This document shows, one piece after another, positions 13,151 to 64,000 of a stretch of 64,000 nt of DNA (positions within the stretch are counted from its first letter, which is position 1; every line of letters starts with the position of its first letter). The notes beneath the pieces are model-generated. The model did no database searches and was not told the DNA's origin. It saw only the letters and a list, made by a program, of their open reading frames with translations. The position numbers and the translations under genes were made by a program. Location: positions 62,001 to 126,000 of the IMG/VR virus record IMGVR_UViG_3300025770_000870. One strand, written 5' to 3'.

Positions 13151-13500
13151 AAGATAATTGTATTAATTTTATATCCTCTTTCAAACATTTTATAAGCTCT
13201 CAGAAAATCTTCTTGTTTCGTAAATAAGCTTATTAAATAGTTTTCAAATTCTACACCAGTGTAACCATCCATGAGCGAGTTTCTAATTCCTCCTACCTTT
13301 ATAACAATACCTTCATAATCAAAGACAGAATGATCAGTGTCTATATCAATACTAAAATTACTCAAAAGGAATCCTATGTGTTTCGCTTTTTCTAAGTATT
13401 CTAATCCGATTTTATCATCATAATCACCACACATTATATCATTGAGGTTTTCACTTAAACCTCCAAAAGTTTTAAATGGTGTTTTATCCAAATGTTTCAT
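13147..13500 (-). CDS. Hypothetical protein with C-terminal tag variant
   Basis: Ends ERGYKINTIIF; TATATTTG promoter at 13593-13600. Confidence 0.6.
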   Translation of the reverse strand: MKHLDKTPFKTFGGLSENLNDIMCGDYDDKIGLEYLEKAKHIGFLLSNFSIDIDTDHSVFDYEGIVIKVGGIRNSLMDGYTGVEFENYLISLFTKQEDFLRAYKMFERGYKINTIIF

Positions 13501-13624
13501 TTAATAAATTTACTGTGTATAATATAATCGACATACACATCAACCATATTAAAAACTTGTTAATATTTTCTTTATACTTTTTATACATATCACAAATATA
13601 AGGATTATTATTAATATATAACAT

Positions 13625-14056
13625 ATGAAACATCTCAAAAGAATAAATGAGTTATATCTAACATCAGATGTGTCTAGTGTTATAGATGATATATTATTGG
13701 AGATTAATGATATACCTAAGTTTGTTGGTCTTAATTGGAATCATACGGATCGTTTGGGTCGGGCATCTGAACATAGTTTTTTGGTTATTATTAAGTTGAG
13801 TGAGGGTATAGAAGATGGTATGGATTATGGTGTTGGTTTAGATGAGGAAATAACAGAAACTATTAAAAGGTTATTAGAATTTATGACAAGCAATCGATAT
13901 GAATACTTGATGGAATTTGGAACAGATAACATACCACCTGGTACTTCAAAAAAAGAATTAAGTGATTATATTAGGAAGTTTGAATATAGTGAATTATCTG
14001 ATAATGATTTAACTATGTGGGTGGATGAATTTATAAGAATAACTTTTACAAAATGA
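13625..14056 (+). CDS. Leader-tagged paralog-family protein
   Basis: MKHLKRINE; VIDDILLEIND; TAATATATA at 13612-13620. Confidence 0.75.
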   Translation: MKHLKRINELYLTSDVSSVIDDILLEINDIPKFVGLNWNHTDRLGRASEHSFLVIIKLSEGIEDGMDYGVGLDEEITETIKRLLEFMTSNRYEYLMEFGTDNIPPGTSKKELSDYIRKFEYSELSDNDLTMWVDEFIRITFTK

Positions 14057-14472
14057 GATACATGAAAACATATGAATCATTTGGGAATCCCTTTGGTAAC
14101 AGTCCGAGGGATAGACGAATCAAGTTGTACAGTTTCCCCAGGGCAACACTTTTACTTGAAATCGAGGATATTCTAAGAGAGTTAGAGGATAATAATATAC
14201 GTGTTGAGGTATATTTTTGGGATGGTGTTGAGGTTTTCTTAACCAGTAGAAACGAACATGAAGTTAGAAGAGGCTTACTAGCTCCTGATACATTCCCATA
14301 TGAGGTTATAAAACCTAATATAGAGCATCTAGTTTCTTTCTTAGAAGAAATTGGATATAAAATTAAAAGTATTCATAATATTGTTAATCTTGAATCAAGA
14401 GGATCAATAACTCAATATCCTGATTTGGATGGTGAAGAAATAGGTAGATTGGAATTTAGATTTATCAAATAA
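14053..14472 (+). CDS. Leader-tagged paralog-family protein
   Basis: MRYMKTYESF; IEDILRELED; ATGA overlap. Confidence 0.75.
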   Translation: MRYMKTYESFGNPFGNSPRDRRIKLYSFPRATLLLEIEDILRELEDNNIRVEVYFWDGVEVFLTSRNEHEVRRGLLAPDTFPYEVIKPNIEHLVSFLEEIGYKIKSIHNIVNLESRGSITQYPDLDGEEIGRLEFRFIK

Positions 14473-15355: not shown

Positions 15356-15496
15356 ATGGAAGGAATGAGGAAAATTATTATGTTTAGTCTTGTAATGATA
15401 GTGTTAAGTTCTTGTGGAGTACTCAAGGGTGGTAAAGGTAAATGTGAGTGTGAGGACTGGGGTCGAAGAGAGTCTGAAAAGACTGATAGTGTATGA
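15356..15496 (+). CDS. Small lipoprotein
   Basis: MRKIIMFSLVMIVLSSC lipobox; TAATATATA at 15343-15351. Confidence 0.6.
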   Translation: MEGMRKIIMFSLVMIVLSSCGVLKGGKGKCECEDWGRRESEKTDSV

Positions 15497-15882
15497 AATA
15501 CCTAAAAAAATTCAATGATATAAGATTCGAAATAGAAGAATCTGATTCAACTAAAATACGTATGTATGATGTTGATGAAAAAGTTGGTTATTCATCAGTA
15601 ACTATAAAGGATAATATTTTTGATAAATGGAATTTACATGATGATTTAGAAGTTGATCCGATAAAAAATACTAAAAGCTTATACATTCTAGGAATATCAA
15701 TGAGGAATAGGAGAACAGGTTATGGTTCTAATTTAATAAACTATATTGAGGAATATGCTAATAAGAAAGGATGTGAATACATCACACTAAGTTCTATTAC
15801 CGATGCTTTGGGGTTCTGGAAAAAAATGGGATATGAAGTTTATAGTATGGGTGATTACTATTCAATGTATAAGAAGTTATAA
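15493..15882 (+). CDS. Leader-tagged GNAT acetyltransferase
   Basis: MKYLKKFND; RRTGYGSNLI acetyl-CoA motif; ALGFWKKMGY. Confidence 0.85.
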   Translation: MKYLKKFNDIRFEIEESDSTKIRMYDVDEKVGYSSVTIKDNIFDKWNLHDDLEVDPIKNTKSLYILGISMRNRRTGYGSNLINYIEEYANKKGCEYITLSSITDALGFWKKMGYEVYSMGDYYSMYKKL

Positions 15883-24335: not shown

Positions 24336-25061
24336 TTACAAAATCGACTTTATCTCATTTACTTTATCCTCACTCAATAACTTAGACATAACTCTCCAAA
24401 ATATATCATCATTATCAGCCATTGATTCTGATAATCTAAAAATAGGAATTGGTTTTTCTATATTTTTTAATTCCATCTCAAAGATATAAAACAACATAAA
24501 TTCTTTAGATATCAAAATAACTTCTGGATTATCAACTAACAATTTATCATAATTATCACTTTTCATTATATCAAATGATGCTGGGTAAAAATGTTCGATA
24601 AGTCTGTTATATAAATGGAATCCAATAGATGCTTTAGTATCACCAAATAATTTAGTATTAGCTTCTATTCTAGATGTTCTATTTATAACAGTCCCAACAT
24701 AAGTATTTAATAAACCTGTTCCAACTTCCCATATGTTACCGGAGTCAGATCCTATACCAAATGATGCTTTTACTCCAGTGATACTAACAAAGTCATTACA
24801 TAATTTATTTAAAGCTCTGTGTGTTGATAATAGATAAGCGTATCCTTCAATATAATTTTTATCTGATAAAAATATTGTTAATACTCCATCACCGGTTGTA
24901 CCCATATGTATATCATCGGATATAATATTAGCTATATCTGATTGTATTTGATAATAAGACTCGATGAAATTTAAAAATTCATTGGATTGTTTATATTGAA
25001 AGTTTTCAAATAACCCACTAAAATTCCTGATATCTGTTAATATTGTAGTCGCTGATTTCAT
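24336..25061 (-). CDS. Stand-alone class III adenylate/guanylate cyclase domain protein
   Basis: LTDIRNFS, GDGVL, G..IN.TSRIE motifs; TATCTTTG promoter. Confidence 0.85.
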   Translation of the reverse strand: MKSATTILTDIRNFSGLFENFQYKQSNEFLNFIESYYQIQSDIANIISDDIHMGTTGDGVLTIFLSDKNYIEGYAYLLSTHRALNKLCNDFVSITGVKASFGIGSDSGNIWEVGTGLLNTYVGTVINRTSRIEANTKLFGDTKASIGFHLYNRLIEHFYPASFDIMKSDNYDKLLVDNPEVILISKEFMLFYIFEMELKNIEKPIPIFRLSESMADNDDIFWRVMSKLLSEDKVNEIKSIL

Positions 25062-25110: not shown

Positions 25111-25380
25111 TTATATTTTATTCCTAGATTTTTCTTCTTTACCACAAAAAAAACATTTAATATATCTTTTATCATCACTACCAACTATCCTTTTATCACA
25201 TTGACTTAGACACTTAGCCTGTGGTATAACTTCTTCTTTACCAACTAACTTAATTCTATTTGGTTTGAAGAATTTAATCACAACATCATCACCATTTTCA
25301 GAAACGACCTTACCTAATCTACCTCTCACAGTAACTATATCATCTTTTGTGAATTCTTCAAATAATTTTAAATGTAACAT
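25111..25380 (-). CDS. Leader-tagged small protein (KOW/SH3-like plus Zn ribbon)
   Basis: MLHLKLFEEF; TAATATATA at 25385-25393. Confidence 0.7.
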   Translation of the reverse strand: MLHLKLFEEFTKDDIVTVRGRLGKVVSENGDDVVIKFFKPNRIKLVGKEEVIPQAKCLSQCDKRIVGSDDKRYIKCFFCGKEEKSRNKI

Positions 25381-25431
25381 AAGTTATATATTATAATTAA
25401 TATATAAAGAAATAATAAAAAATATAATTAT

Positions 25432-25818
25432 ATGAAATATTTAAAGAAATTTTTCGAAGACCTTGAGGAAGCTCAAGAAGAAGTAGTACAGGCACAGAGT
25501 GAAGGTGATATGGATGCTTGTATTGAGGCTTGTAATAAATGTGCTGAGATATGTAAAAGGTGTGCTGATGAGTGTGCTAAGAATGATAATGAAGAGTGTG
25601 CTAAGAATTGTACAGAATGTGCTTTATTATGTGAATTATGTGCTACAGCTTGTGAGAGTGGATCAACTAGATCTAAAGATATCTGTGAGTTGTGTGTAGA
25701 TTGTTGTAAAGACTGTGTTGAGTCATGTGATGATTGTGGTTCAGAAACTTGTACAGAATGTTCAGCGGCTTGTAATGTTTGTATAGAAGAGTGTATGATG
25801 TGTCTTGAGTCCATGTAA
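25432..25818 (+). CDS. Leader-tagged Cys-rich four-helix bundle, copper-storage (Csp/DUF326)-like
   Basis: MKYLKKFFE; 25 Cys in CxxxCxxC helical repeats. Confidence 0.8.
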   Translation: MKYLKKFFEDLEEAQEEVVQAQSEGDMDACIEACNKCAEICKRCADECAKNDNEECAKNCTECALLCELCATACESGSTRSKDICELCVDCCKDCVESCDDCGSETCTECSAACNVCIEECMMCLESM

Positions 25819-26011: not shown

Positions 26012-26626
26012 TTAATTTTTTATAATCCCTAAATCTTTTAATGCTAGATAACCAAAGTAAGCTCCGAATAGAGCCATAAATAAGAATCCTGACATAACAC
26101 TAACGATAATTAATAACACTGATGTTACTAAAGAAACTTTAGCCGCTATTGAAAATGCTTGTCCTCGGTTGATTCCTAATTTTCTACTTTTTATTGATAA
26201 TAAATCTCTTAAAATTCTACCACCATCCATTGGATATATTGGGAGAATGTTAAATACGAACAGTAATAGGTTAACCATCATAAATGAATCAATGAATGTG
26301 TTTGGATAAACAAAACTAATCAACATTCCAATGAAATATAGAGTTAGATTACTTATTGGACCTGCGGCCGTGATTGGAATAGAATCTCTCTCGTGTATAT
26401 TAGAATCAATAGAGGCAGATCCACTAAATAAACCAACCTCAATACCATATACTCTATAACCCCTTCTGTTAGCTACAAAAGCGTGTGCCATTTCATGCAA
26501 TATTACTGATATAAAAATTGAAACTGCAATCGGTATTGGTGTTATTATAAATATAATCAGGAAGAGTAGGTTCAGATTAACTGGTGTTCCCTGGAATGTA
26601 AATAACTTAAATATTAAATTTGTCAT
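26012..26626 (-). CDS. Site-2 protease (peptidase M50)
   Basis: HEMAH, AGP.SN, FNILPIYPMDGGR. Confidence 0.92.
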   Translation of the reverse strand: MTNLIFKLFTFQGTPVNLNLLFLIIFIITPIPIAVSIFISVILHEMAHAFVANRRGYRVYGIEVGLFSGSASIDSNIHERDSIPITAAGPISNLTLYFIGMLISFVYPNTFIDSFMMVNLLLFVFNILPIYPMDGGRILRDLLSIKSRKLGINRGQAFSIAAKVSLVTSVLLIIVSVMSGFLFMALFGAYFGYLALKDLGIIKN

Positions 26627-28394: not shown

Positions 28395-29861
28395 ATGAAA
28401 TCTTACACAGAGTTTCTTTTAGAAAAAAAGGAAAATGATTTATTGGAATTACTCAATGAGGCTGTATTTATTATGGCACCGGAAATGAGTGATATAATAG
28501 ATGAGTTATATAATAGTGAAGAGGGTTATTCTAAAATAGCTAAATGTTTCTATATGTTAGATATGGAAGACATAGACACTCAGATAAGTTATCTAAACTT
28601 AGGAGATGATAATTCAACTATAACATTCCTAAAACCAGAAAAAGTTGATAAGATAAGAAAGGAAAAAGAATGGACAATAAATGATGTGTGGGTAAATGTC
28701 AAAGGTAATGGTATTAGAGTTGGGAGGTTAACTAGAAAGGTTATCGAACTTTATAATAAATCAAGAAGTGTAAAAACCACTAAAGCGACTAATTCTTCCA
28801 TAAGTGATGTTAAATTTACAGATCAAGAAATCGAGAAGTTTGTAAATGCTTACAAATCTCAATATGATTTTAATAATAATATAATGGATAATTTTAGTTT
28901 AGTATCAAGTGAAGATGATATTAAAGAAGCTTATTTAGAAGATAATTATTATAGTGGTGATGGTACACTTGGTGGTTCTTGTATGAGAAACGATGATGCT
29001 CAAAATTACCTTGAATTATATCATAATACATCAGTAAATCTATTGGTATTGAAATCAGCAAATAATAAAATTATGGGAAGATCTGTTATATGGACCCTAA
29101 GTGATGGTAGGAAATTTATGGATAGAACTTACACGAATAGAGATTCTGATGTTGATTTGTTTATAAAATATGCTCAAGAGAATAGATATATTTATAAAGC
29201 GGAACAAGACTCACGAGCCCACACTTATTTTTATGAACCTGGTGATAATTATAACAACAGCTCATTTATACAATTGGAATCAAAAGTTTATGAATTTAGT
29301 ATTGGTAATAATGGGGGCGAGGAATTTCCTTATATGGACACAATGAAATATCTTTACTGGGAAGAAGGTATTATACGCAATTATAAAGATAAATCAAATT
29401 ATTATATCAAATTGGAAGATGTTGATGGTTGGTGTGATTGTGCTGAATGTGATGGCGAAGGTAGAGAAGAATGTAATAAGTGTGATGGTGATGGTAACAA
29501 TACATGTGAAGATTGTCGTGGGTATGGGTATGAGGAATGTAGTAGATGTAATGGATATGGTGATAATATGTGTAAAGAATGTGATGGTGATGAGGAAGTT
29601 GAGTGTGAAGAATGTGATGGTGAAGGTTATATAGATGGGGAAACGTGTGGTACTTGTGGTGGATCCAGTAAGGTTACTTGTGTTACTTGTGATGGATATG
29701 GTACAGAAAATTGTTCAAATTGTGATGGTGATGGTAGAGAAGAATGTGGTGAGTGTAATAACAACGGAACAATTGAATGTGAGACTTGTGATGGTGATGG
29801 TGAAGGTGAATGTAGTAGATGTGGGGGATATTCTCATAGAGATTTTTTTGTTAGTAATTGA
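28395..29861 (+). CDS. Leader-tagged protein with SCM/FMDRxY domain and 12 DnaJ-type CxxCxGxG repeats
   Basis: MKSYTEFLLE; GTLGGSCM; GRSVIW..DGRKFMDR; paralog of ORF 39078. Confidence 0.8.
   Translation: MKSYTEFLLEKKENDLLELLNEAVFIMAPEMSDIIDELYNSEEGYSKIAKCFYMLDMEDIDTQISYLNLGDDNSTITFLKPEKVDKIRKEKEWTINDVWVNVKGNGIRVGRLTRKVIELYNKSRSVKTTKATNSSISDVKFTDQEIEKFVNAYKSQYDFNNNIMDNFSLVSSEDDIKEAYLEDNYYSGDGTLGGSCMRNDDAQNYLELYHNTSVNLLVLKSANNKIMGRSVIWTLSDGRKFMDRTYTNRDSDVDLFIKYAQENRYIYKAEQDSRAHTYFYEPGDNYNNSSFIQLESKVYEFSIGNNGGEEFPYMDTMKYLYWEEGIIRNYKDKSNYYIKLEDVDGWCDCAECDGEGREECNKCDGDGNNTCEDCRGYGYEECSRCNGYGDNMCKECDGDEEVECEECDGEGYIDGETCGTCGGSSKVTCVTCDGYGTENCSNCDGDGREECGECNNNGTIECETCDGDGEGECSRCGGYSHRDFFVSN
29694..29730. 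repeat. 37-bp perfect inverted repeat with 39245-39281
   Basis: GGATATGGTACAGAAAATTGTTCAAATTGTGATGGTG, in frame in both Zn-finger paralogs. Confidence 0.85.
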
Positions 29862-39077: not shown

Positions 39078-40559
39078 TTATTGACAATCATAACAAGGTC
39101 GTTCACCTCTCCCACTACAATCAGAACATTCTATGGTTGAATTACCATCACATTCAGTACAATCTACTTTACCCCTAGCATCACAATCCTCACAATCTAC
39201 ATCATGTTCTTCACCATCAGATCCTTCTTCTGTTATAGTTCCTCCACCATCACAATTTGAACAATTTTCTGTACCATATCCGTCACATTCTGGACAGTCT
39301 CTTTCACCACTACCACCACAATCATAACATTCCACTTCGCCTCCACCACCACATCCCTCACATCTATAATGTGAGCCTTCAGTATCTTCTAATATATAAC
39401 AATTACCACATTCATCTATTGATAGTGTACCATTATCTTTATTCCAATATTTCAAAGTGTCTAAGTAAGGATATTTTTCATATTCACCTGGTTTTATATC
39501 CACGATTATGTTCAAATTTGTATCATCACCATTAGGATCAATACAACTACCATTGGCGTTGGATGCGTTTCCACGTTTTGTATACCAACCATTCTCTTTA
39601 GCATAATCCTTAAATAATTGAACATCAGAATCATTGGCTGTGTATATTCTATCCATAAATCTTTTACCATCTCTCAATTTCCAAAGTAATGCTCTTCCTA
39701 AAATTTTATCTGTATCATCATCTGATTTATAAATAACCAAAGTACAAACTTCTGGATTAGAAATATAGATATCAAAAAATTCCTCATCAACAGCGGACAT
39801 ACAAGAACTACCTAATACGCCCCTCCTTGTCGAGTAATGTGAATAGTGATACCAATATCCTATTTTATCACCAGTAACTTCTTCAAATAGTGAAAATTTA
39901 TCATTAAATTTATCAATTGTTGCTTTATATAAATTAACAAATACTTCAATATCCTTATCAAGGAATTCTATATCATTAGTTTTAAGTAATGCTCTAATAG
40001 CTCTACCTACTTTAACTTCTTGTCTATTCGTTGACCAAATTTTATCCAATCTATCATCAACCTTTCTAATCTTTTCGGCATTTATGACCAATTCTGTACT
40101 TGGGAATTTAACATAAACAAATCTCTTACCCGATTCTTCCGAAACTGTTTCTTTAATAATTTCTCCTAGTTCATCATTTTCTGGTTTTATCAATTCCTCA
40201 CCAGGTGTGAATCCTAAAGCATCGAAAATAGTTTTATTTTTATATTCTCCTCCTTCATTTTTATTAAAAGTTAACCAACCACCATTATTACCAACAAATC
40301 TAACCTTAATATTTTCCTCACTCAGTATTTGTTGTGCTCTTCTATCTGGTATAAATGATACTTTATCATTTTTATCCATTACTATATCAAAATAATTAGA
40401 CCTAACGTCTAAATCTTTATTCTCAACATCTAAAAGTGATTTGGATACTGGGTTCTCTATTTTTGAAAGAGTGAGTCTAAATTTATCAGAATAAACGACA
40501 TCCGACTCCAATATTAACTCTAATGACTCATTTATGAAATCAAAATACTTTTTTAACAT
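39078..40559 (-). CDS. Leader-tagged protein with SCM/FMDRIY domain and 8 CxxC(xGxG) repeats
   Basis: MLKKYFDFINES; GVLGSSCM; ILGRALLW..DGKRFMDRIY; paralog of ORF 28395. Confidence 0.8.
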   Translation of the reverse strand: MLKKYFDFINESLELILESDVVYSDKFRLTLSKIENPVSKSLLDVENKDLDVRSNYFDIVMDKNDKVSFIPDRRAQQILSEENIKVRFVGNNGGWLTFNKNEGGEYKNKTIFDALGFTPGEELIKPENDELGEIIKETVSEESGKRFVYVKFPSTELVINAEKIRKVDDRLDKIWSTNRQEVKVGRAIRALLKTNDIEFLDKDIEVFVNLYKATIDKFNDKFSLFEEVTGDKIGYWYHYSHYSTRRGVLGSSCMSAVDEEFFDIYISNPEVCTLVIYKSDDDTDKILGRALLWKLRDGKRFMDRIYTANDSDVQLFKDYAKENGWYTKRGNASNANGSCIDPNGDDTNLNIIVDIKPGEYEKYPYLDTLKYWNKDNGTLSIDECGNCYILEDTEGSHYRCEGCGGGGEVECYDCGGSGERDCPECDGYGTENCSNCDGGGTITEEGSDGEEHDVDCEDCDARGKVDCTECDGNSTIECSDCSGRGERPCYDCQ

Positions 40560-62226: not shown

Positions 62227-64000
62227 TTAAGCAGGGGCGTATTTACCAGTACCATTTTTTTCGGCTCTAACATCATTATAAGTAGCTAAAGCAGCTTCAC
62301 ACTTCTTTATTCTTTCACCAGCGTGATGTTTGTAATAGTCCCTATTGGATACTCCGTTTTTATAGATTGCATCAGGCTTCTTTAGTGGTCGGCCGACTGA
62401 ACCAGGAACCTCAAAGTCACATAAAATTGCTTCACAATAAGCACCTATTGTTTGTGTTGGCTTACCACCCTTTTGGTTGATAAAAGTACCATTCTTTATC
62501 AACTTAGCTGAATTACCAGATGGAATACCAGCGAACATTTTTTGAATTCTACCTCCTTTACCGGAGCTCTGAGTCAATTCAGATATTAAAAAGGCACATT
62601 GTGCCTCAAATAAATAAGGCACTGATTTCAAATATACTTCGAGTTTATTTAAAGTATCTCTTCCAATCTTAACAGTTCCGCCTCCATGTGGTCTTGGATC
62701 TGTATCAAGGAATCCATTCTTCAAAGCTGAAGTCTTAACTCCTTTGTTAGTTAGATACTCACCACAAAATTTCTCCATGTTATATCTCCTTGAATATGTC
62801 CATTGAGCTAAGCCGAGACCAGAGAATACTTGACATTTACCTTTCTTACACGTATAATGTTTTACTGATCCTTGTTTTGCGTTCTCTTTTGACCACCGTT
62901 TTGCACCCATCCCACCGGGTACTATGTAATTTGCTTGATTTTCAATATTCCAAAATTTAAAACTTGATTCTGCATCGATATTACCACAGATACCAGCTGC
63001 TTGGTCTTTTGTAAACCCGCCCTCCTTGATTAACAATTCCATCAAAATATAAATCGCCTGTCGTTTCGTTTGGTTGTTACTAGGTGATGCTGGTGTAGGA
63101 GGTTCACCAGTAGCTGGATCAGCGTCTGGATCATTGGATCCATTCTGTTCCCGCGCCTCATCCCGCTCCTCAGCTGCTTCTGCTTCTGCCTCCTCTTGAC
63201 CTAAGAATGCAGTTTCTCGGTACTCATCGTCCAATTCACCAAGTTGTTCAAAATCATCCTGGAAAACAAACCCACCGGGTTCGATTAGTGTTAATTTACC
63301 AATTTTTGAATCTACTATTATTGATAAAGAATCTTCATATGATTTGAGAGAATCGTTACTAGTTGTTCCGCCGCTTGCACTTCCACTTGATAAAGGAAGA
63401 AACACTCCCTCAATTTCAACATTGAATGTTATTATATTTTTTTTTGATTCTACATCACCGCTTTGTGAACCCGTAATTACAGGCGCGGGCTCTTCTACTT
63501 CTTCTTCTGGTAGTAATTTTATGGGGCTTTTATACTCTACTAATTCTCCTGAATAATATAAACCTTTTTCACTTTTAGCAGGTGTTGAATTAGCCGCCCC
63601 CAATCTACCACCACCTTCGGGGTTATATATGTTACAAGCCACACCATTACCAAATATTTTATTAGTGTTCCCATCCTTCGCTGGCCACCTACCGAGTGAT
63701 GTTTCCTGTGGATCTATCAACTCACATTGACCAACATTATAATTAGGTACTTTTTTATTCCAAGCAGATAGTATATCATTTATGATATCAACATCATCAA
63801 CATTACCAGTATATTTCTTTTCTTGCTTCTCTAATTTTGTTGTGGTAGATTTCCCAGTATCGTCATAAGTCGTTTCATATCCAACCTTAGTAGATAATTC
63901 TAATAAATTATCCTCTGTTATATAAAGAACAGATTCTTCGGTCTTCCATTGTGGATCAAAAGAAGGGTCACTAGGAGTCCGTATGGTTACCGACTTAATT
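62227..64000 (-). CDS. Virion-associated protein with C-terminal phage tail lysozyme (Phage_lysozyme2-like); 5' end outside window
   Basis: Frame stays open to base 64000; AAGICGNI.AES, GLAQWT..R, Q..FL..EL, FEVP. Confidence 0.85.
   Translation of the reverse strand, partial: IKSVTIRTPSDPSFDPQWKTEESVLYITEDNLLELSTKVGYETTYDDTGKSTTTKLEKQEKKYTGNVDDVDIINDILSAWNKKVPNYNVGQCELIDPQETSLGRWPAKDGNTNKIFGNGVACNIYNPEGGGRLGAANSTPAKSEKGLYYSGELVEYKSPIKLLPEEEVEEPAPVITGSQSGDVESKKNIITFNVEIEGVFLPLSSGSASGGTTSNDSLKSYEDSLSIIVDSKIGKLTLIEPGGFVFQDDFEQLGELDDEYRETAFLGQEEAEAEAAEERDEAREQNGSNDPDADPATGEPPTPASPSNNQTKRQAIYILMELLIKEGGFTKDQAAGICGNIDAESSFKFWNIENQANYIVPGGMGAKRWSKENAKQGSVKHYTCKKGKCQVFSGLGLAQWTYSRRYNMEKFCGEYLTNKGVKTSALKNGFLDTDPRPHGGGTVKIGRDTLNKLEVYLKSVPYLFEAQCAFLISELTQSSGKGGRIQKMFAGIPSGNSAKLIKNGTFINQKGGKPTQTIGAYCEAILCDFEVPGSVGRPLKKPDAIYKNGVSNRDYYKHHAGERIKKCEAALATYNDVRAEKNGTGKYAPA

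What the first reader, a model, noticed from the sequence alone, without database searches (positions are those of the whole stretch)
25432..25818. Copper-storage-like Cys bundle fused to the packaging leader
Seen: MKYLKKFFE leader, an acidic linker and 25 Cys in CxxxCxxC helices. Established: Csp/DUF326 four-helix bundles bind many Cu(I) ions. Inference: a metal or redox sink carried in the virion or injected at infection, an unusual cargo for a phage head.
Basis: partly seen in the sequence, partly recalled or inferred. Interest (0 to 1): 0.6.

Follow-up and report, generated by a model that had tools for sequence, protein, structure and literature searches.

The report
Tagged copper-storage protein in a megaphage
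A marine giant phage encodes a small protein whose core is lined with cysteines like bacterial copper-storage proteins. It also carries a short N-terminal tag found on about one in seven of this phage's proteins; the tag resembles phage T4's capsid-targeting peptide, but loading into the virion is untested.

Summary
Window 25432-25818 (+) encodes a 128-aa protein with 25 Cys, no His, an MKYLKKFFE start and an acidic linker.

It belongs to the Csp/DUF326 family:
- Pfam score is just over the cutoff.
- The best solved relative by sequence is BsCsp3 (E 3.8e-8).
- The AlphaFold model (pLDDT 96) superposes on Cu(I)-BsCsp3 (rmsd 1.5 A).
- The Cys lie on one face of each of the four helices.
- It is under strong purifying selection (dN/dS 0.06) against its ortholog in the 635-kb phage LR745206.

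The genome is a marine megaphage of at least ~545 kb with T4-type head genes.

The "leader" is real. An M-K-[YH]-[LI]-K-x-[FY] N-terminus sits on 51 of 361 ORFs, which are otherwise unrelated. It is conserved as a peptide rather than as DNA, recurs in related megaphages, and is nearly absent from 596 Gb of prokaryote genomes. It resembles the T4 internal-protein targeting peptides, and half of the tagged genes share a promoter-like motif with head genes. Cleavage or packaging is not shown.

Best reading: a host-derived, His-free Csp3 variant that sequesters Cu(I) in the infected cell. Virion cargo stays a live rival. Copper binding itself is untested.

The parts
25397..25406 (+). Promoter-like motif TTAATATATA. 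Its AATATATA core starts 33 nt before the ATG.
   Evidence: Read. The 8-mer lies within 70 nt upstream of 28/51 leader genes against 64/310 other ORFs (Fisher p 1e-6), clustered at -12/-13 or -27 to -37. It is also upstream of the portal, head protease, TerL and the 153-162 kb structural cluster, and absent at helicases and a nuclease. Function as a promoter is inferred.
25432..25818 (+). Coding sequence of the 128-aa Csp3-like protein (stop codon included).
   Evidence: Pfam DUF326/Csp 21.1 bits against a cutoff of 20.4, or 27.2 bits with neighbouring repeats in frame. BsCsp3 E 3.8e-8. dN/dS 0.057 against the LR745206 ortholog.
25432..25458 (+). N-terminal tag MKYLKKFFE (residues 1-9), an amphipathic peptide shared with about 14% of the phage's ORFs.
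   Evidence: Synonymous codons in the tag follow genome-wide usage, so it is conserved as a peptide. Hydrophobic moment is 0.73. The first 17 residues are identical in the LR745206 ortholog although dS is saturated.
25459..25515 (+). Acidic helical linker (residues 10-28, DLEEAQEEVVQAQSEGDMD). It contains L11-E12-E13, a hydrophobic-x-Glu site of the kind T4-type prohead proteases cut.
   Evidence: The AF2 model has one continuous helix over residues 2-50, with pLDDT 87-91 in this part. Leader proteins have a median net charge of -3 over residues 9-30 against 0 for others, and 34/51 against 79/310 have [LIFYVM]-x-E in residues 7-16. Cleavage is not shown.
25516..25581 (+). Helix 1 core segment (residues 29-50) with Cys 30, 34, 37, 41, 44, 48.
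   Evidence: The Cys lie on one helical face, resultant 0.90.
25591..25659 (+). Helix 2 (residues 54-76) with Cys 56, 60, 63, 67, 70, 74.
   Evidence: resultant 0.90. By my reading of the alignment, C60, C70 and C74 are extra relative to BsCsp3 (D, A and M there).
25672..25737 (+). Helix 3 (residues 81-102) with Cys 85, 88, 91, 92, 95, 99, 102. The helix 3 - loop - helix 4 junction has Cys/Asp where classical Csp3s have the His motif.
   Evidence: resultant 0.77. The classical His motif is described in PMC10155185.
25744..25812 (+). Helix 4 (residues 105-127) with Cys 107, 110, 114, 117, 121, 124, and Met 122, 123 (and 128) near the end.
   Evidence: resultant 0.83.

Best explanation
The ORF is a real, selected phage gene. 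It encodes a non-classical (His-free, all-thiolate) member of the cytosolic copper-storage protein family Csp3. It is a four-helix bundle whose core is lined by six layers of Cys, 24-25 thiols in all. Such a core should fill with Cu(I) as thiolate clusters, about 20 or more ions per monomer by analogy with solved Csp3s. The gene was probably captured from a Bacteroidota-like host. It has no secretion signal, so it would act in the cytoplasm of the infected marine bacterium, and it is transcribed from a phage promoter-like element shared with head genes. There it would act as a high-capacity sink for Cu(I), or another soft metal. That could protect a long megaphage infection from copper toxicity, or control copper availability. 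The same phage also encodes a secreted HMA (CopZ/MerP-type) metal-binding protein. The N-terminal MKYLKKFFE tag plus acidic linker is a phage-added module shared with about 50 otherwise unrelated proteins. Its role is unresolved; a T4-CTS-like prohead-targeting function is the leading candidate and is listed as a rival. Shown here: family membership, fold, Cys geometry, selection, tag modularity and distribution. Inferred: metal binding, the metal's identity, timing of expression and site of action.
For: - Family by sequence: Pfam DUF326/Csp over cutoff. PDB sequence hits are BsCsp3 5fig E 3.8e-8, Nmul_A1745 3lmf, PA2107, MtCsp3, Ccsp and Csp1.
- Fold: AF2 pLDDT 95.9 with four helices. Foldseek's top hits are all Csps, led by Cu(I)-BsCsp3 6wkt (TM 0.88 by target, rmsd 1.5 A).
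- Cys geometry: all Cys on one face per helix. The 25 Cys is at the top of the family; the median is 19 for 109 homologs of 95-150 aa.
- Selection: dN/dS 0.057 with 24/25 Cys kept at saturated dS.
- Cytosolic type: no hydrophobic or twin-Arg signal.
- Origin: in the tree the phage Csp-likes group with leaderless proteins (SH-aLRT 92). One of these lies in a Bacteroidota MAG, in a bacterial context next to OsmC and RpoN.
- Second metal gene: G000 13364-13696 (-) is a signal-peptide HMA protein, PF00403 E 2.5e-12.
- Occurrence: the stretch is held in marine metagenomes from at least 15 studies, and a 250-nt contig of a metatranscriptome run lies inside the ORF.
- Published function: Csp3s bind about 16-20 Cu(I) per monomer and protect against Cu toxicity (PMC5171941, PMC10155185).
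Against: - No metal-binding measurement exists. The Pfam score is marginal, because the model is a 21-residue repeat.
- The protein has no His, whereas studied Csp3s have 4-7.
- Phage relatives carrying the same tag have lost most Cys (14, 11 and 6 Cys in P0009, P0053/P0071/P0157 and P0162). The family's common function may therefore not need a full Cu core.
- No copper enzyme was found in the three megaphage records: no multicopper oxidase and no Cu-SOD.
- The HMA gene is absent from LR745206.
- The RNA-library contig does not prove transcription.
- The shared tag may mean the protein does not act, or not only act, in the producing cell.
Confidence: 0.55

Rival explanations
1. The MKYLK-type N-terminus is a capsid-targeting sequence like that of the T4 internal proteins. 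It docks the Csp-like protein, and dozens of other tagged proteins, onto the scaffolding core of a T4-type prohead. The prohead protease removes it after a Glu (E9 or L11-E12-E13). The bundle is then packaged with the DNA and injected into the next host as a pre-made metal or thiol sink.
For: - Head genes are T4-type: MCP Pfam Gp23 E 2.7e-26, portal Portal_T4 E 2e-56, head maturation protease phrog_207 E 1.6e-30 with weak Peptidase_S77 hits.
- The tag sits on 51 ORFs that fall into 46 BLASTP clusters once 12 residues are trimmed. This matches the T4 IPs, 'a highly diverse set ... with only a conserved CTS' (PMC3012670).
- Sequence resemblance: T4 IPI starts MKTFKEFTS against the consensus MKYLKTFES. 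T4 IPII/III start MKTYQEFIAE against MKSYTEFLLE of window ORF 28395.
- 34/51 tags are followed by hydrophobic-x-Glu within residues 7-16, against 25% of other ORFs. Giant-phage proteases cut after Glu, for example at TFE-275 (PMC5694885).
- The promoter-like motif is shared with portal, protease and TerL.
- Two tagged ORFs lie inside structural operons: G000 171966-172526 next to the tail sheath, and 204029-204523 after the MCP/peptidase genes.
- All three near-complete leader-bearing viral records tested have a Gp23-type MCP.
Against: - Nothing shows cleavage or virion presence.
- 14% of ORFs is far more than any known CTS set.
- The Csp gene's neighbours are RNase H, an M50 peptidase, an EEP nuclease, a receiver domain and GH16, not head genes.
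- The model makes tag, linker and helix 1 one continuous helix with no obvious flexible cleavage site.
- T4 gp61.1, a hypothetical protein that I do not know to be packaged (own knowledge), also starts MKTFKEF.
- The similarity is over 9-10 residues made of the commonest amino acids in AT-rich genomes.
- A protein with net charge about -20 is an odd companion for packed DNA (inference).
- No cultured relative with proteomics carries the tag: PTm1 and HTVC008M are negative.
Confidence: 0.3
2. The bundle is not a copper store. The thiol-lined core could bind another soft metal (Zn, Cd, Hg, Ag), act as a redox or sulfur buffer, or be on its way to becoming an ordinary helical bundle with a protein-binding (for example inhibitor) role.
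For: - Tag-bearing relatives keep the fold signature while replacing most Cys with hydrophobic residues, leaving 6-14 Cys.
- The protein is His-free and very acidic.
- The phage's HMA protein has a MerP-like periplasmic layout with a CxxC and a C-terminal CC.
- No copper enzymes were found in the genome.
- Only one physiological Csp3 function is known so far (PMC10155185).
Against: - In this protein and its 80%-identical ortholog, 24/25 Cys survive saturated synonymous divergence.
- The layer geometry matches Cu(I)-loaded BsCsp3 at 1.5 A.
- All characterised members with this architecture bind Cu(I) with very high affinity.
Confidence: 0.12
3. The shared N-terminus is not a sorting signal. It could be an expression element (a translational ramp for often leaderless late mRNAs), or a membrane-binding amphipathic helix that places the proteins at the inner membrane.
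For: - Codons 2-3 are AAA-TAT and AT-rich.
- 17 of the 29 motif occurrences upstream of tagged genes lie at -12 to -14, abutting the ATG. This would give leaderless or nearly leaderless transcripts.
- The tag is strongly amphipathic, with Lys flanking an aromatic face.
Against: - Synonymous sites inside the tag vary as in the rest of the genome, so selection acts on the peptide.
- Conserved aromatic positions 7 and 10 and the Glu lie beyond a 3-5 codon ramp.
- The exact MKYLK[KT]FE coding pattern occurs only 6 times in 596 Gb of prokaryote genomes, against more than 116 viral stretches. It is therefore not a general host translation optimum.
- The Csp gene itself has about 20 nt between the motif and the ATG.
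- The acidic segment after the tag would disfavour anionic membranes (inference).
Confidence: 0.15

Closest known systems
Cytosolic copper storage proteins Csp3 (BsCsp3/YhjQ 5fig/6wkt, MtCsp3 5arm, SlCsp3/Ccsp 6ei0, RkCsp3 6zif)
   Same: Same Pfam family and the same four-helix bundle, with rmsd 1.5-2.3 A and 26-35% identity. Cys sit at core positions of all four helices, and there is no export signal.
   Different: It has 25 Cys against 16-19, and no His against 4-7. The classical helix 3 - loop - helix 4 His motif is replaced by Cys/Asp. It has a 28-residue N-terminal tag plus acidic helix that is absent from bacterial members. It is encoded by a phage. Oligomeric state and Cu binding were not tested.
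Csp1 (exported copper storage protein of methanotrophs, 5fjd)
   Same: Same fold and a Cys-lined core. Met residues lie near one end of the bundle, as in the phage protein's C-terminal CMMCLESM.
   Different: From my own knowledge, Csp1 has 13 Cys and a Tat signal peptide for export. The phage protein has no such signal and nearly twice as many Cys. The sequence match is weaker (E 0.22).
T4 internal proteins IPI, IPII, IPIII and their capsid targeting sequence
   Same: A short N-terminal peptide is shared by otherwise unrelated small proteins. The composition is similar (MKTFKEFTS and MKTYQEFIAE against MKYLKTFES, MKYLKKFFE and MKSYTEFLLE). A Glu follows a hydrophobic residue. The phage has gp20/gp21/gp23-type head genes.
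   Different: T4 has a handful of CTS proteins; this phage tags about 51 ORFs in 242 kb. Neither cleavage nor packaging is shown here. The resemblance covers only 9-10 residues, and a similar start occurs on T4 gp61.1.
Propeptide-bearing ejection/inner-body proteins of giant phages (SPN3US, phiKZ, 201phi2-1)
   Same: These are large myophages with T4-related prohead proteases. They process many head proteins after Glu, and paralogs can share identical N-termini (PMC5694885).
   Different: Those propeptides are mostly longer than 100 residues. No sequence relationship to them was found here, and no proteomics exists for this lineage.
Metallothioneins
   Same: Cys-rich, high-capacity binders of Cu(I) and soft metals (own knowledge).
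   Different: Metallothioneins are unstructured without metal. This protein is a pre-formed helical bundle with Cys at a/d-type positions.

Membership tests
Csp / DUF326 (PF03860), copper storage proteins | Match to the family HMM above Pfam's gathering score | tested here: met
   21.1 bits against a cutoff of 20.4, or 27.2 bits when neighbouring repeats in the frame are summed. It is marginal because the model is a 21-residue repeat. It is backed by phmmer hits to solved Csps, with BsCsp3 at E 3.8e-8, and by 199 homologs at E <= 1e-3 in 1.8 billion representatives.
Csp / DUF326 (PF03860), copper storage proteins | Four-helix bundle superposable on solved Csps | tested here: met
   AF2 mean pLDDT 95.9 and pTM 0.83, with helices 2-50, 54-76, 81-102 and 105-127. 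The top 20+ Foldseek PDB hits are Csps, with TM up to 0.91 by target and rmsd 1.3-2.4 A.
Csp / DUF326 (PF03860), copper storage proteins | Many Cys, all pointing into the bundle core | tested here: met
   There are 25 Cys, 6-7 per helix, at 3/4 spacing. The helical-wheel resultant is 0.77-0.90 per helix.
Csp3 subgroup (cytosolic) | No signal peptide (Csp1 has a Tat leader) | tested here: met
   The N-terminus MKYLKKFFEDLEEAQEE is charged and amphipathic. It has no twin-Arg and no hydrophobic core region. This was judged by eye; no predictor was run.
Classical Csp3 (MtCsp3/BsCsp3/SlCsp3 type) | [quoted passage not shown] | tested here: not met
   The protein has no His. The aligned segment is C99-D-D-C102-G-S-E-T-C107 against GKHDHDHC in BsCsp3. 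It is therefore a non-classical variant. PMC10155185 shows the motif is not essential for Cu(I) uptake.
Csp3 subgroup (cytosolic) | Homotetramer of bundles | not tested
No other test was run.
Csp / DUF326 (PF03860), copper storage proteins | High-stoichiometry, high-affinity Cu(I) binding | not testable with these tools
   This needs anaerobic Cu(I) titration and competition assays. It is inferred from architecture only.
T4-type capsid targeting sequence (CTS) proteins | Short N-terminal peptide shared by otherwise unrelated proteins of one phage | tested here: met
   51/361 ORFs carry it. They fall into 46 BLASTP clusters after 12 residues are trimmed. The tagged proteins include Csp-like, GNAT (window 15493-15879) and HD-domain proteins.
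T4-type capsid targeting sequence (CTS) proteins | Phage builds its head with gp20/gp21/gp23-type portal, protease and capsid protein | tested here: met
   Portal_T4 E 2e-56, Gp23 E 2.7e-26, and phrog_207 head maturation protease E 1.6e-30, with Peptidase_S77 below cutoff.
T4-type capsid targeting sequence (CTS) proteins | Sequence similarity to known CTS peptides | tested here: inconclusive
   By my count from the sequences, 5 of 9 positions are identical to IPI, and ORF 28395 shares 6 of 10 with IPII/III. The stretch is too short for statistics. T4 gp61.1 shares the IPI start.
T4-type capsid targeting sequence (CTS) proteins | Removal by the prohead protease and presence of the mature protein in virions | not testable with these tools
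   Only a compatible hydrophobic-x-Glu site can be pointed to. No cultured relative or proteome is available, and PTm1 and HTVC008M lack the tag.

The most novel reading that the evidence does not exclude
The MKYLK-type peptide is a T4-like capsid-targeting sequence used on an unprecedented scale. On this reading, a lineage of marine and freshwater megaphages with T4-type heads loads 50-100 different small proteins into the capsid and injects them ahead of the DNA. The cargo would include a ready-made 24-thiol Cu(I) sponge, a GNAT acetyltransferase and DnaJ-type zinc-finger proteins.
Probability: 0.28. Interest if true: 0.85.

Novelty: new variant of a known kind. Interest (0 to 1): 0.6.

Why it matters
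Copper-storage proteins are known only from bacteria, and only one physiological role has been shown: feeding the spore laccase CotA.

A phage copy under strong selection would add copper buffering to the list of host processes that large phages control. It has more thiols than any studied member and no histidine, and it sits in a phage that also encodes a secreted HMA metal-binding protein. It would also give bioinorganic chemists a natural all-thiolate variant to study. Neither the paper library nor 50,697 deposited phage records describes such a phage protein. The only deposited copy is an unannotated ORF in LR745206.

The tag may matter more than the protein. It is a peptide-level signature on about one in seven ORFs of an uncultured megaphage lineage, and it is virtually absent from cellular genomes. 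This yields a directly testable list of candidate virion or ejected proteins, or of some other phage-specific sorting pathway, for phages that cannot yet be grown.

Tried and rejected
**Family and literature searches**
- NCBIfam and PHROGs gave no meaningful family for the protein.
- Ten tagged ORFs gave no PHROG assignment, apart from one GNAT.
- Ten longer tagged ORFs gave almost no Pfam domains, apart from one HD domain.
- A search for the peptide strings returned only unrelated papers.
- 'Copper storage protein' plus 'phage' found no paper on a phage Csp.
- A search on conserved N-terminal tags in jumbo phages found nothing relevant.

**Searches for related phages and contexts**
- tblastn of 50,697 phage records found only LR745206.
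- The contexts of relatives P0008, P0009 and P0053 were too short to say anything.
- Mar_Mega_1 (OU342829) is not in the phage collection.

**Copper partners**
- No multicopper oxidase and no Cu,Zn-SOD was found in the three megaphage records.

**Cultured phages carrying the tag**
- Pelagibacter phage HTVC008M has 0 matches and Tenacibaculum phage PTm1 has 2 loose matches, so no proteomic link exists.

**Other steps**
- PDB sequence searches with the 714-aa virion protein (G000 160049-162193) and with the protease found nothing.
- The careful ML tree did not finish, so the quick tree was used and most forks are unresolved.

**Rejected readings**
- A chance ORF is rejected by Cys statistics, homology and dN/dS.
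- The antisense ORF 25473-25814 as a gene is rejected.
- A Sec/Tat or lipoprotein signal for the tag is rejected, because it is charged and has no hydrophobic core.
- A DNA-level repeat as the cause of the shared start is rejected by synonymous variation.

**Compliance with operator notes**
- Read laying was given 5,101 letters.
- Only table 11 was used.
Full report
**1. The observation**

Window 25432-25818 (+) is an ATG-to-TAA ORF of 128 codons. The product has 25 Cys, all TGT, plus 21 Glu and 10 Asp, and no His, Trp or Pro.

The Cys fall into four blocks with 4-3-4-3-4 spacing:
- block 1: 30, 34, 37, 41, 44, 48
- block 2: 56, 60, 63, 67, 70, 74
- block 3: 85, 88, 91, 92, 95, 99, 102
- block 4: 107, 110, 114, 117, 121, 124

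Cys makes up 19.5% of the protein against 1.0% over all ORFs of the genome (binomial P about 6e-25). It is the most Cys-rich of 361 ORFs. The N-terminus reads MKYLKKFFE and is followed by DLEEAQEEVVQAQSEGD. The 113-codon antisense ORF (25473-25814) is a mirror of the TGT periodicity and has no support.

**2. What the protein is**

Sequence evidence:
- Pfam places it in DUF326/Csp at 21.1 bits (cutoff 20.4), or 27.2 bits when the repeats in the frame are summed.
- Against PDB sequences the best match is B. subtilis Csp3 (5fig/6wkt, E 3.8e-8). Next come Nmul_A1745, PA2107, MtCsp3, Streptomyces Ccsp and Csp1.
- An exhaustive phmmer search of 1.8 billion representatives found 199 homologs at E <= 1e-3.

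Structural evidence:
- With 112 of those homologs as alignment, AlphaFold2 gives a very confident model (pLDDT 95.9). It has four helices at 2-50, 54-76, 81-102 and 105-127.
- Foldseek's top PDB matches are all copper storage proteins, led by Cu(I)-loaded BsCsp3 (TM 0.88 by target, rmsd 1.5 A, 33% identity).

Differences from studied members:
- Studied Csp3s have 16-19 Cys and 4-7 His, and the classical ones carry a His motif in the helix 3 - loop - helix 4 turn.
- This protein has 25 Cys; the family median is 19 for 109 homologs of similar size.
- By my reading of the alignment, it has Cys where BsCsp3 has D, A, M, I and H.
- It has no His at all.

So it is a member of the family by every feature I could test, and a non-classical, all-thiolate variant. 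Tetramer formation and metal binding were not tested.

**3. It is a selected gene of a marine megaphage**

The genome:
- The window is part of a 241,918-bp IMG/VR viral record with 30% GC.
- An identical protein lies on a 483-kb viral contig. That contig is collinear with this record from about position 62,447, so the genome spans at least ~545 kb.
- An 80.5%-identical ortholog lies in LR745206.1, a 634.8-kb uncultured phage. It was the only hit among 50,697 deposited phage records.
- PMC9723777 places LR745206 among the largest megaphages and notes a SusC-like gene in it.
- Head genes are T4-type: portal Portal_T4 E 2e-56, capsid protein Gp23 E 2.7e-26, head maturation protease phrog_207 E 1.6e-30, and TerL.

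Selection and occurrence:
- Between the two orthologs dN/dS is 0.057 with dS saturated. 24 of 25 Cys are kept, and the first 17 residues are identical.
- Local synteny is kept: a 241-aa ORF lies upstream and an M50 peptidase downstream.
- The stretch is held in seawater and marine metagenomes from at least 15 studies.
- A 250-nt contig of a metatranscriptome library lies inside the ORF. This is compatible with expression but does not prove it.

**4. The leader**

In this genome:
- 51 of 361 ORFs start with M-K-[YH]-[LI]-K-[TK]-[FY], usually followed by E/N/K, x, F, E.
- After 12 residues are trimmed, these 51 proteins form 46 BLASTP clusters. The peptide is therefore a tag on unrelated proteins, not the head of one paralog family.
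- The tagged set includes the Csp-like protein, a GNAT acetyltransferase (window 15493-15879) and an HD-domain protein. Most are small ORFans, some in arrays.
- Synonymous codons inside the tag follow genome-wide usage, so selection acts on the peptide.

In other genomes:
- A strict DNA pattern finds 28, 33, 53 and 57 copies in this record, the 483-kb contig, LR745206 and LR756502. The reversed control gives 0, 0, 0 and 1.
Every hit is at the start of an ORF.
- The same pattern hits only 6 places in 596 Gb of prokaryote genomes.
- The mid-size contigs with the tag are 6-25% fragments. All three near-complete tagged records tested (385-676 kb) have a Gp23-type capsid protein.

In the Csp family:
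- Bacterial Csp3s lack the tag.
- At least nine phage-type Csp-like proteins from other metagenomes keep it (MK[HY]LK[KR]FFE...) although the domain has diverged to 30-45% identity.
- In a quick tree they group together with a few leaderless proteins (SH-aLRT 92). One of those is from a Bacteroidota MAG, in a clearly bacterial context next to OsmC and RpoN.
- The simplest history is capture of a Bacteroidota-type Csp3 followed by addition of the tag.

**5. Is it a packaging leader?**

Evidence in favour:
- The phage has T4-type head genes.
[quoted passage not shown] That sequence is a 10-residue peptide cut off by gp21 (PMC10229621).
- Read from the T4 record, IPII/IPIII start MKTYQEFIAE and IPI starts MKTFKEFTS. 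Compare the consensus MKYLKTFES and, closer still, MKSYTEFLLE on the Cys-rich 488-aa ORF at window 28395.
- Two thirds of the tags are followed by hydrophobic-x-Glu within residues 7-16, against a quarter of other ORFs. The Csp protein has F-F-E9 and L-E-E13.
- A promoter-like TAATATATA lies within 70 nt upstream of 55% of tagged genes against 21% of others. It clusters at -12/-13 or about -30.
- The same motif precedes the portal, protease, TerL and the main structural cluster, but not helicases or a nuclease. That fits a late promoter.
- The Csp gene has the motif at 25397-25406.
- Two tagged ORFs sit inside tail and head operons.

Evidence against:
- Nothing shows cleavage or virion presence.
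- 14% of ORFs is far beyond any known CTS set.
- The Csp gene's neighbours are accessory genes.
- The model shows tag, linker and helix 1 as one helix.
- The similarity spans 9-10 residues of common amino acids.
- T4 gp61.1, which I do not know to be packaged (own knowledge; the record calls it hypothetical), starts exactly like IPI.
- By my own estimate the 8-mer motif is expected about 100 times by composition alone, against 159 observed. Only its positional clustering carries weight.

I put the packaging reading at about 0.3.

**6. Mechanism proposed**

The most likely account is as follows:
- The phage makes a cytosolic Csp3-type bundle late in infection.
- Its six layers of thiolates take up Cu(I) as clusters, as in solved Csp3s.
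- This buffers copper in the infected cell.

A second metal gene supports a metal-handling theme. G000 13364-13696 (-) encodes a signal-peptide HMA protein with a CxxC and a C-terminal CC. No copper enzyme that might receive the metal was found.

One caution: tag-bearing relatives have lost most Cys (14, 11 or 6). What the wider phage family has in common may therefore be something other than a full copper core. The 25-Cys form is, however, clearly maintained in this phage and in LR745206.

**7. Novelty**

- The paper library holds no report of a phage Csp.
- Deposited phages hold only the unannotated LR745206 copy.
- BFVD holds two unannotated look-alikes, one from an uncultured marine phage and one from a Megaviridae environmental sample.
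- I found no description of the shared N-terminal tag.

I rate the protein a new variant of a known kind. The lineage-wide tag is the more surprising element.

**8. Limits**

- Metal binding, oligomeric state, timing, processing and host are all inferred.
- The complex prediction could not be run.
- The tree is a quick one with few columns.
- The ORF set is my own ATG-to-stop call, not a curated annotation.

Noticed in passing
G000:C1:13364-13696 (- strand; L002:13364-13696), outside the window: A 110-aa protein with a signal peptide (MKYKILLLSIALFFTTFINAQ), an HMA heavy-metal-associated domain with a CGSC motif, and a C-terminal PVCCKPGG. Pfam HMA E 2.4e-11. It is a second thiol-metal protein in the same phage, next to a small multi-pass membrane ORF (13752-14096). 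It is absent from LR745206.
   Followed up: partly
window 28395-29861 (+) and 39078-40559 (-): Two Cys-rich proteins of about 490 aa (27 and 21 Cys). ORF 28395 matches the DnaJ/BSD2 cysteine-rich zinc-finger domain in PDB (E 2.7e-4); ORF 39078 had no Pfam hit. ORF 28395 starts MKSYTEFLLE, which is very like the T4 IPII/IPIII capsid-targeting peptide MKTYQEFIAE.
   Followed up: partly
P0006 (locus L013:40-1053, and two Logan contigs of 7.5 and 16.6 kb): In another phage, the tag plus the first three helices of a Csp-like bundle (21 Cys) are fused in frame to a terminase large-subunit ATPase-like domain (Pfam Csp + Terminase_6N). The C-terminal part matches this phage's TerL at 33% identity. The Walker A lysine seems to be missing (SRQIGAT). 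The fusion was seen on 5 contigs.
   Followed up: partly
G000 genome-wide; in the window for example 25397-25406 (+) and 25385-25392 (- strand, for ORF 25111-25380): The promoter-like motif TAATATATA occurs in two spacing classes: abutting the ATG (start at -12/-13), which would give leaderless mRNAs, and about 27-37 nt upstream. It precedes the portal, head protease, TerL and the structural cluster, but not helicases or a nuclease. It also occurs before tagged ORFs in many AT-rich IMG/VR contigs.
   Followed up: partly
window 24336-25061 (-): A 241-aa ORF that is adjacent to the Csp gene in LR745206 and separated from it here by an 89-aa ORF. To my eye its motifs (DIRNFSG ... GDGVLTIF ... NRTSRIE) recall class III nucleotidyl cyclases. 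The only support is a PDB hit to a guanylyl cyclase domain at E 0.63, with no Pfam hit. This is a lead only.
   Followed up: partly
window 26012-26626 (-): A membrane Peptidase_M50 (site-2 protease type, E 2.4e-16) lies downstream of the Csp gene, on the opposite strand, in both this phage and LR745206.
   Followed up: no
G000:C1:19638-25466 (outside the window); also LR756502 11122-15638: Arrays of about ten consecutive small ORFs that all start with the MK[YH][LI]K tag. Several share a second motif about 20 residues in (I-x-D-I-[LF]-[LS]-x-[LV]-x-D-x-G), which suggests expanding paralog families.
   Followed up: no
G000 (242 kb) against G001 = IMGVR_UViG_3300027996_002186 (483 kb): The two records are collinear with an offset of about 62,446 bp, so the phage genome spans at least ~545 kb. 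CheckV's '89% complete' for the 242-kb record is therefore far off.
   Followed up: partly
BFVD entries A0A8D9FR86 and A0A5J6VLP3: These are two unannotated viral proteins with a Csp-like fold. One is a 'putative fusion protein' of an uncultured marine phage (116 aa, rmsd 1.5 A). The other is a 193-aa protein of a Megaviridae environmental sample (33% identity over 98 columns).
   Followed up: no
window 15493-15879 (+): A 129-aa GNAT acetyltransferase (Pfam Acetyltransf_1 E 1.4e-7, domain at residues 26-114) carries the same MKYLKKF tag. It is an enzyme bearing the leader.
   Followed up: partly
T4 NC_000866 18966-19130 (-), gene 61.1: T4 gp61.1, a 54-aa hypothetical protein encoded next to the primase gene, begins with exactly the same 21 nucleotides (MKTFKEF) as internal protein IPI.
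   Followed up: no
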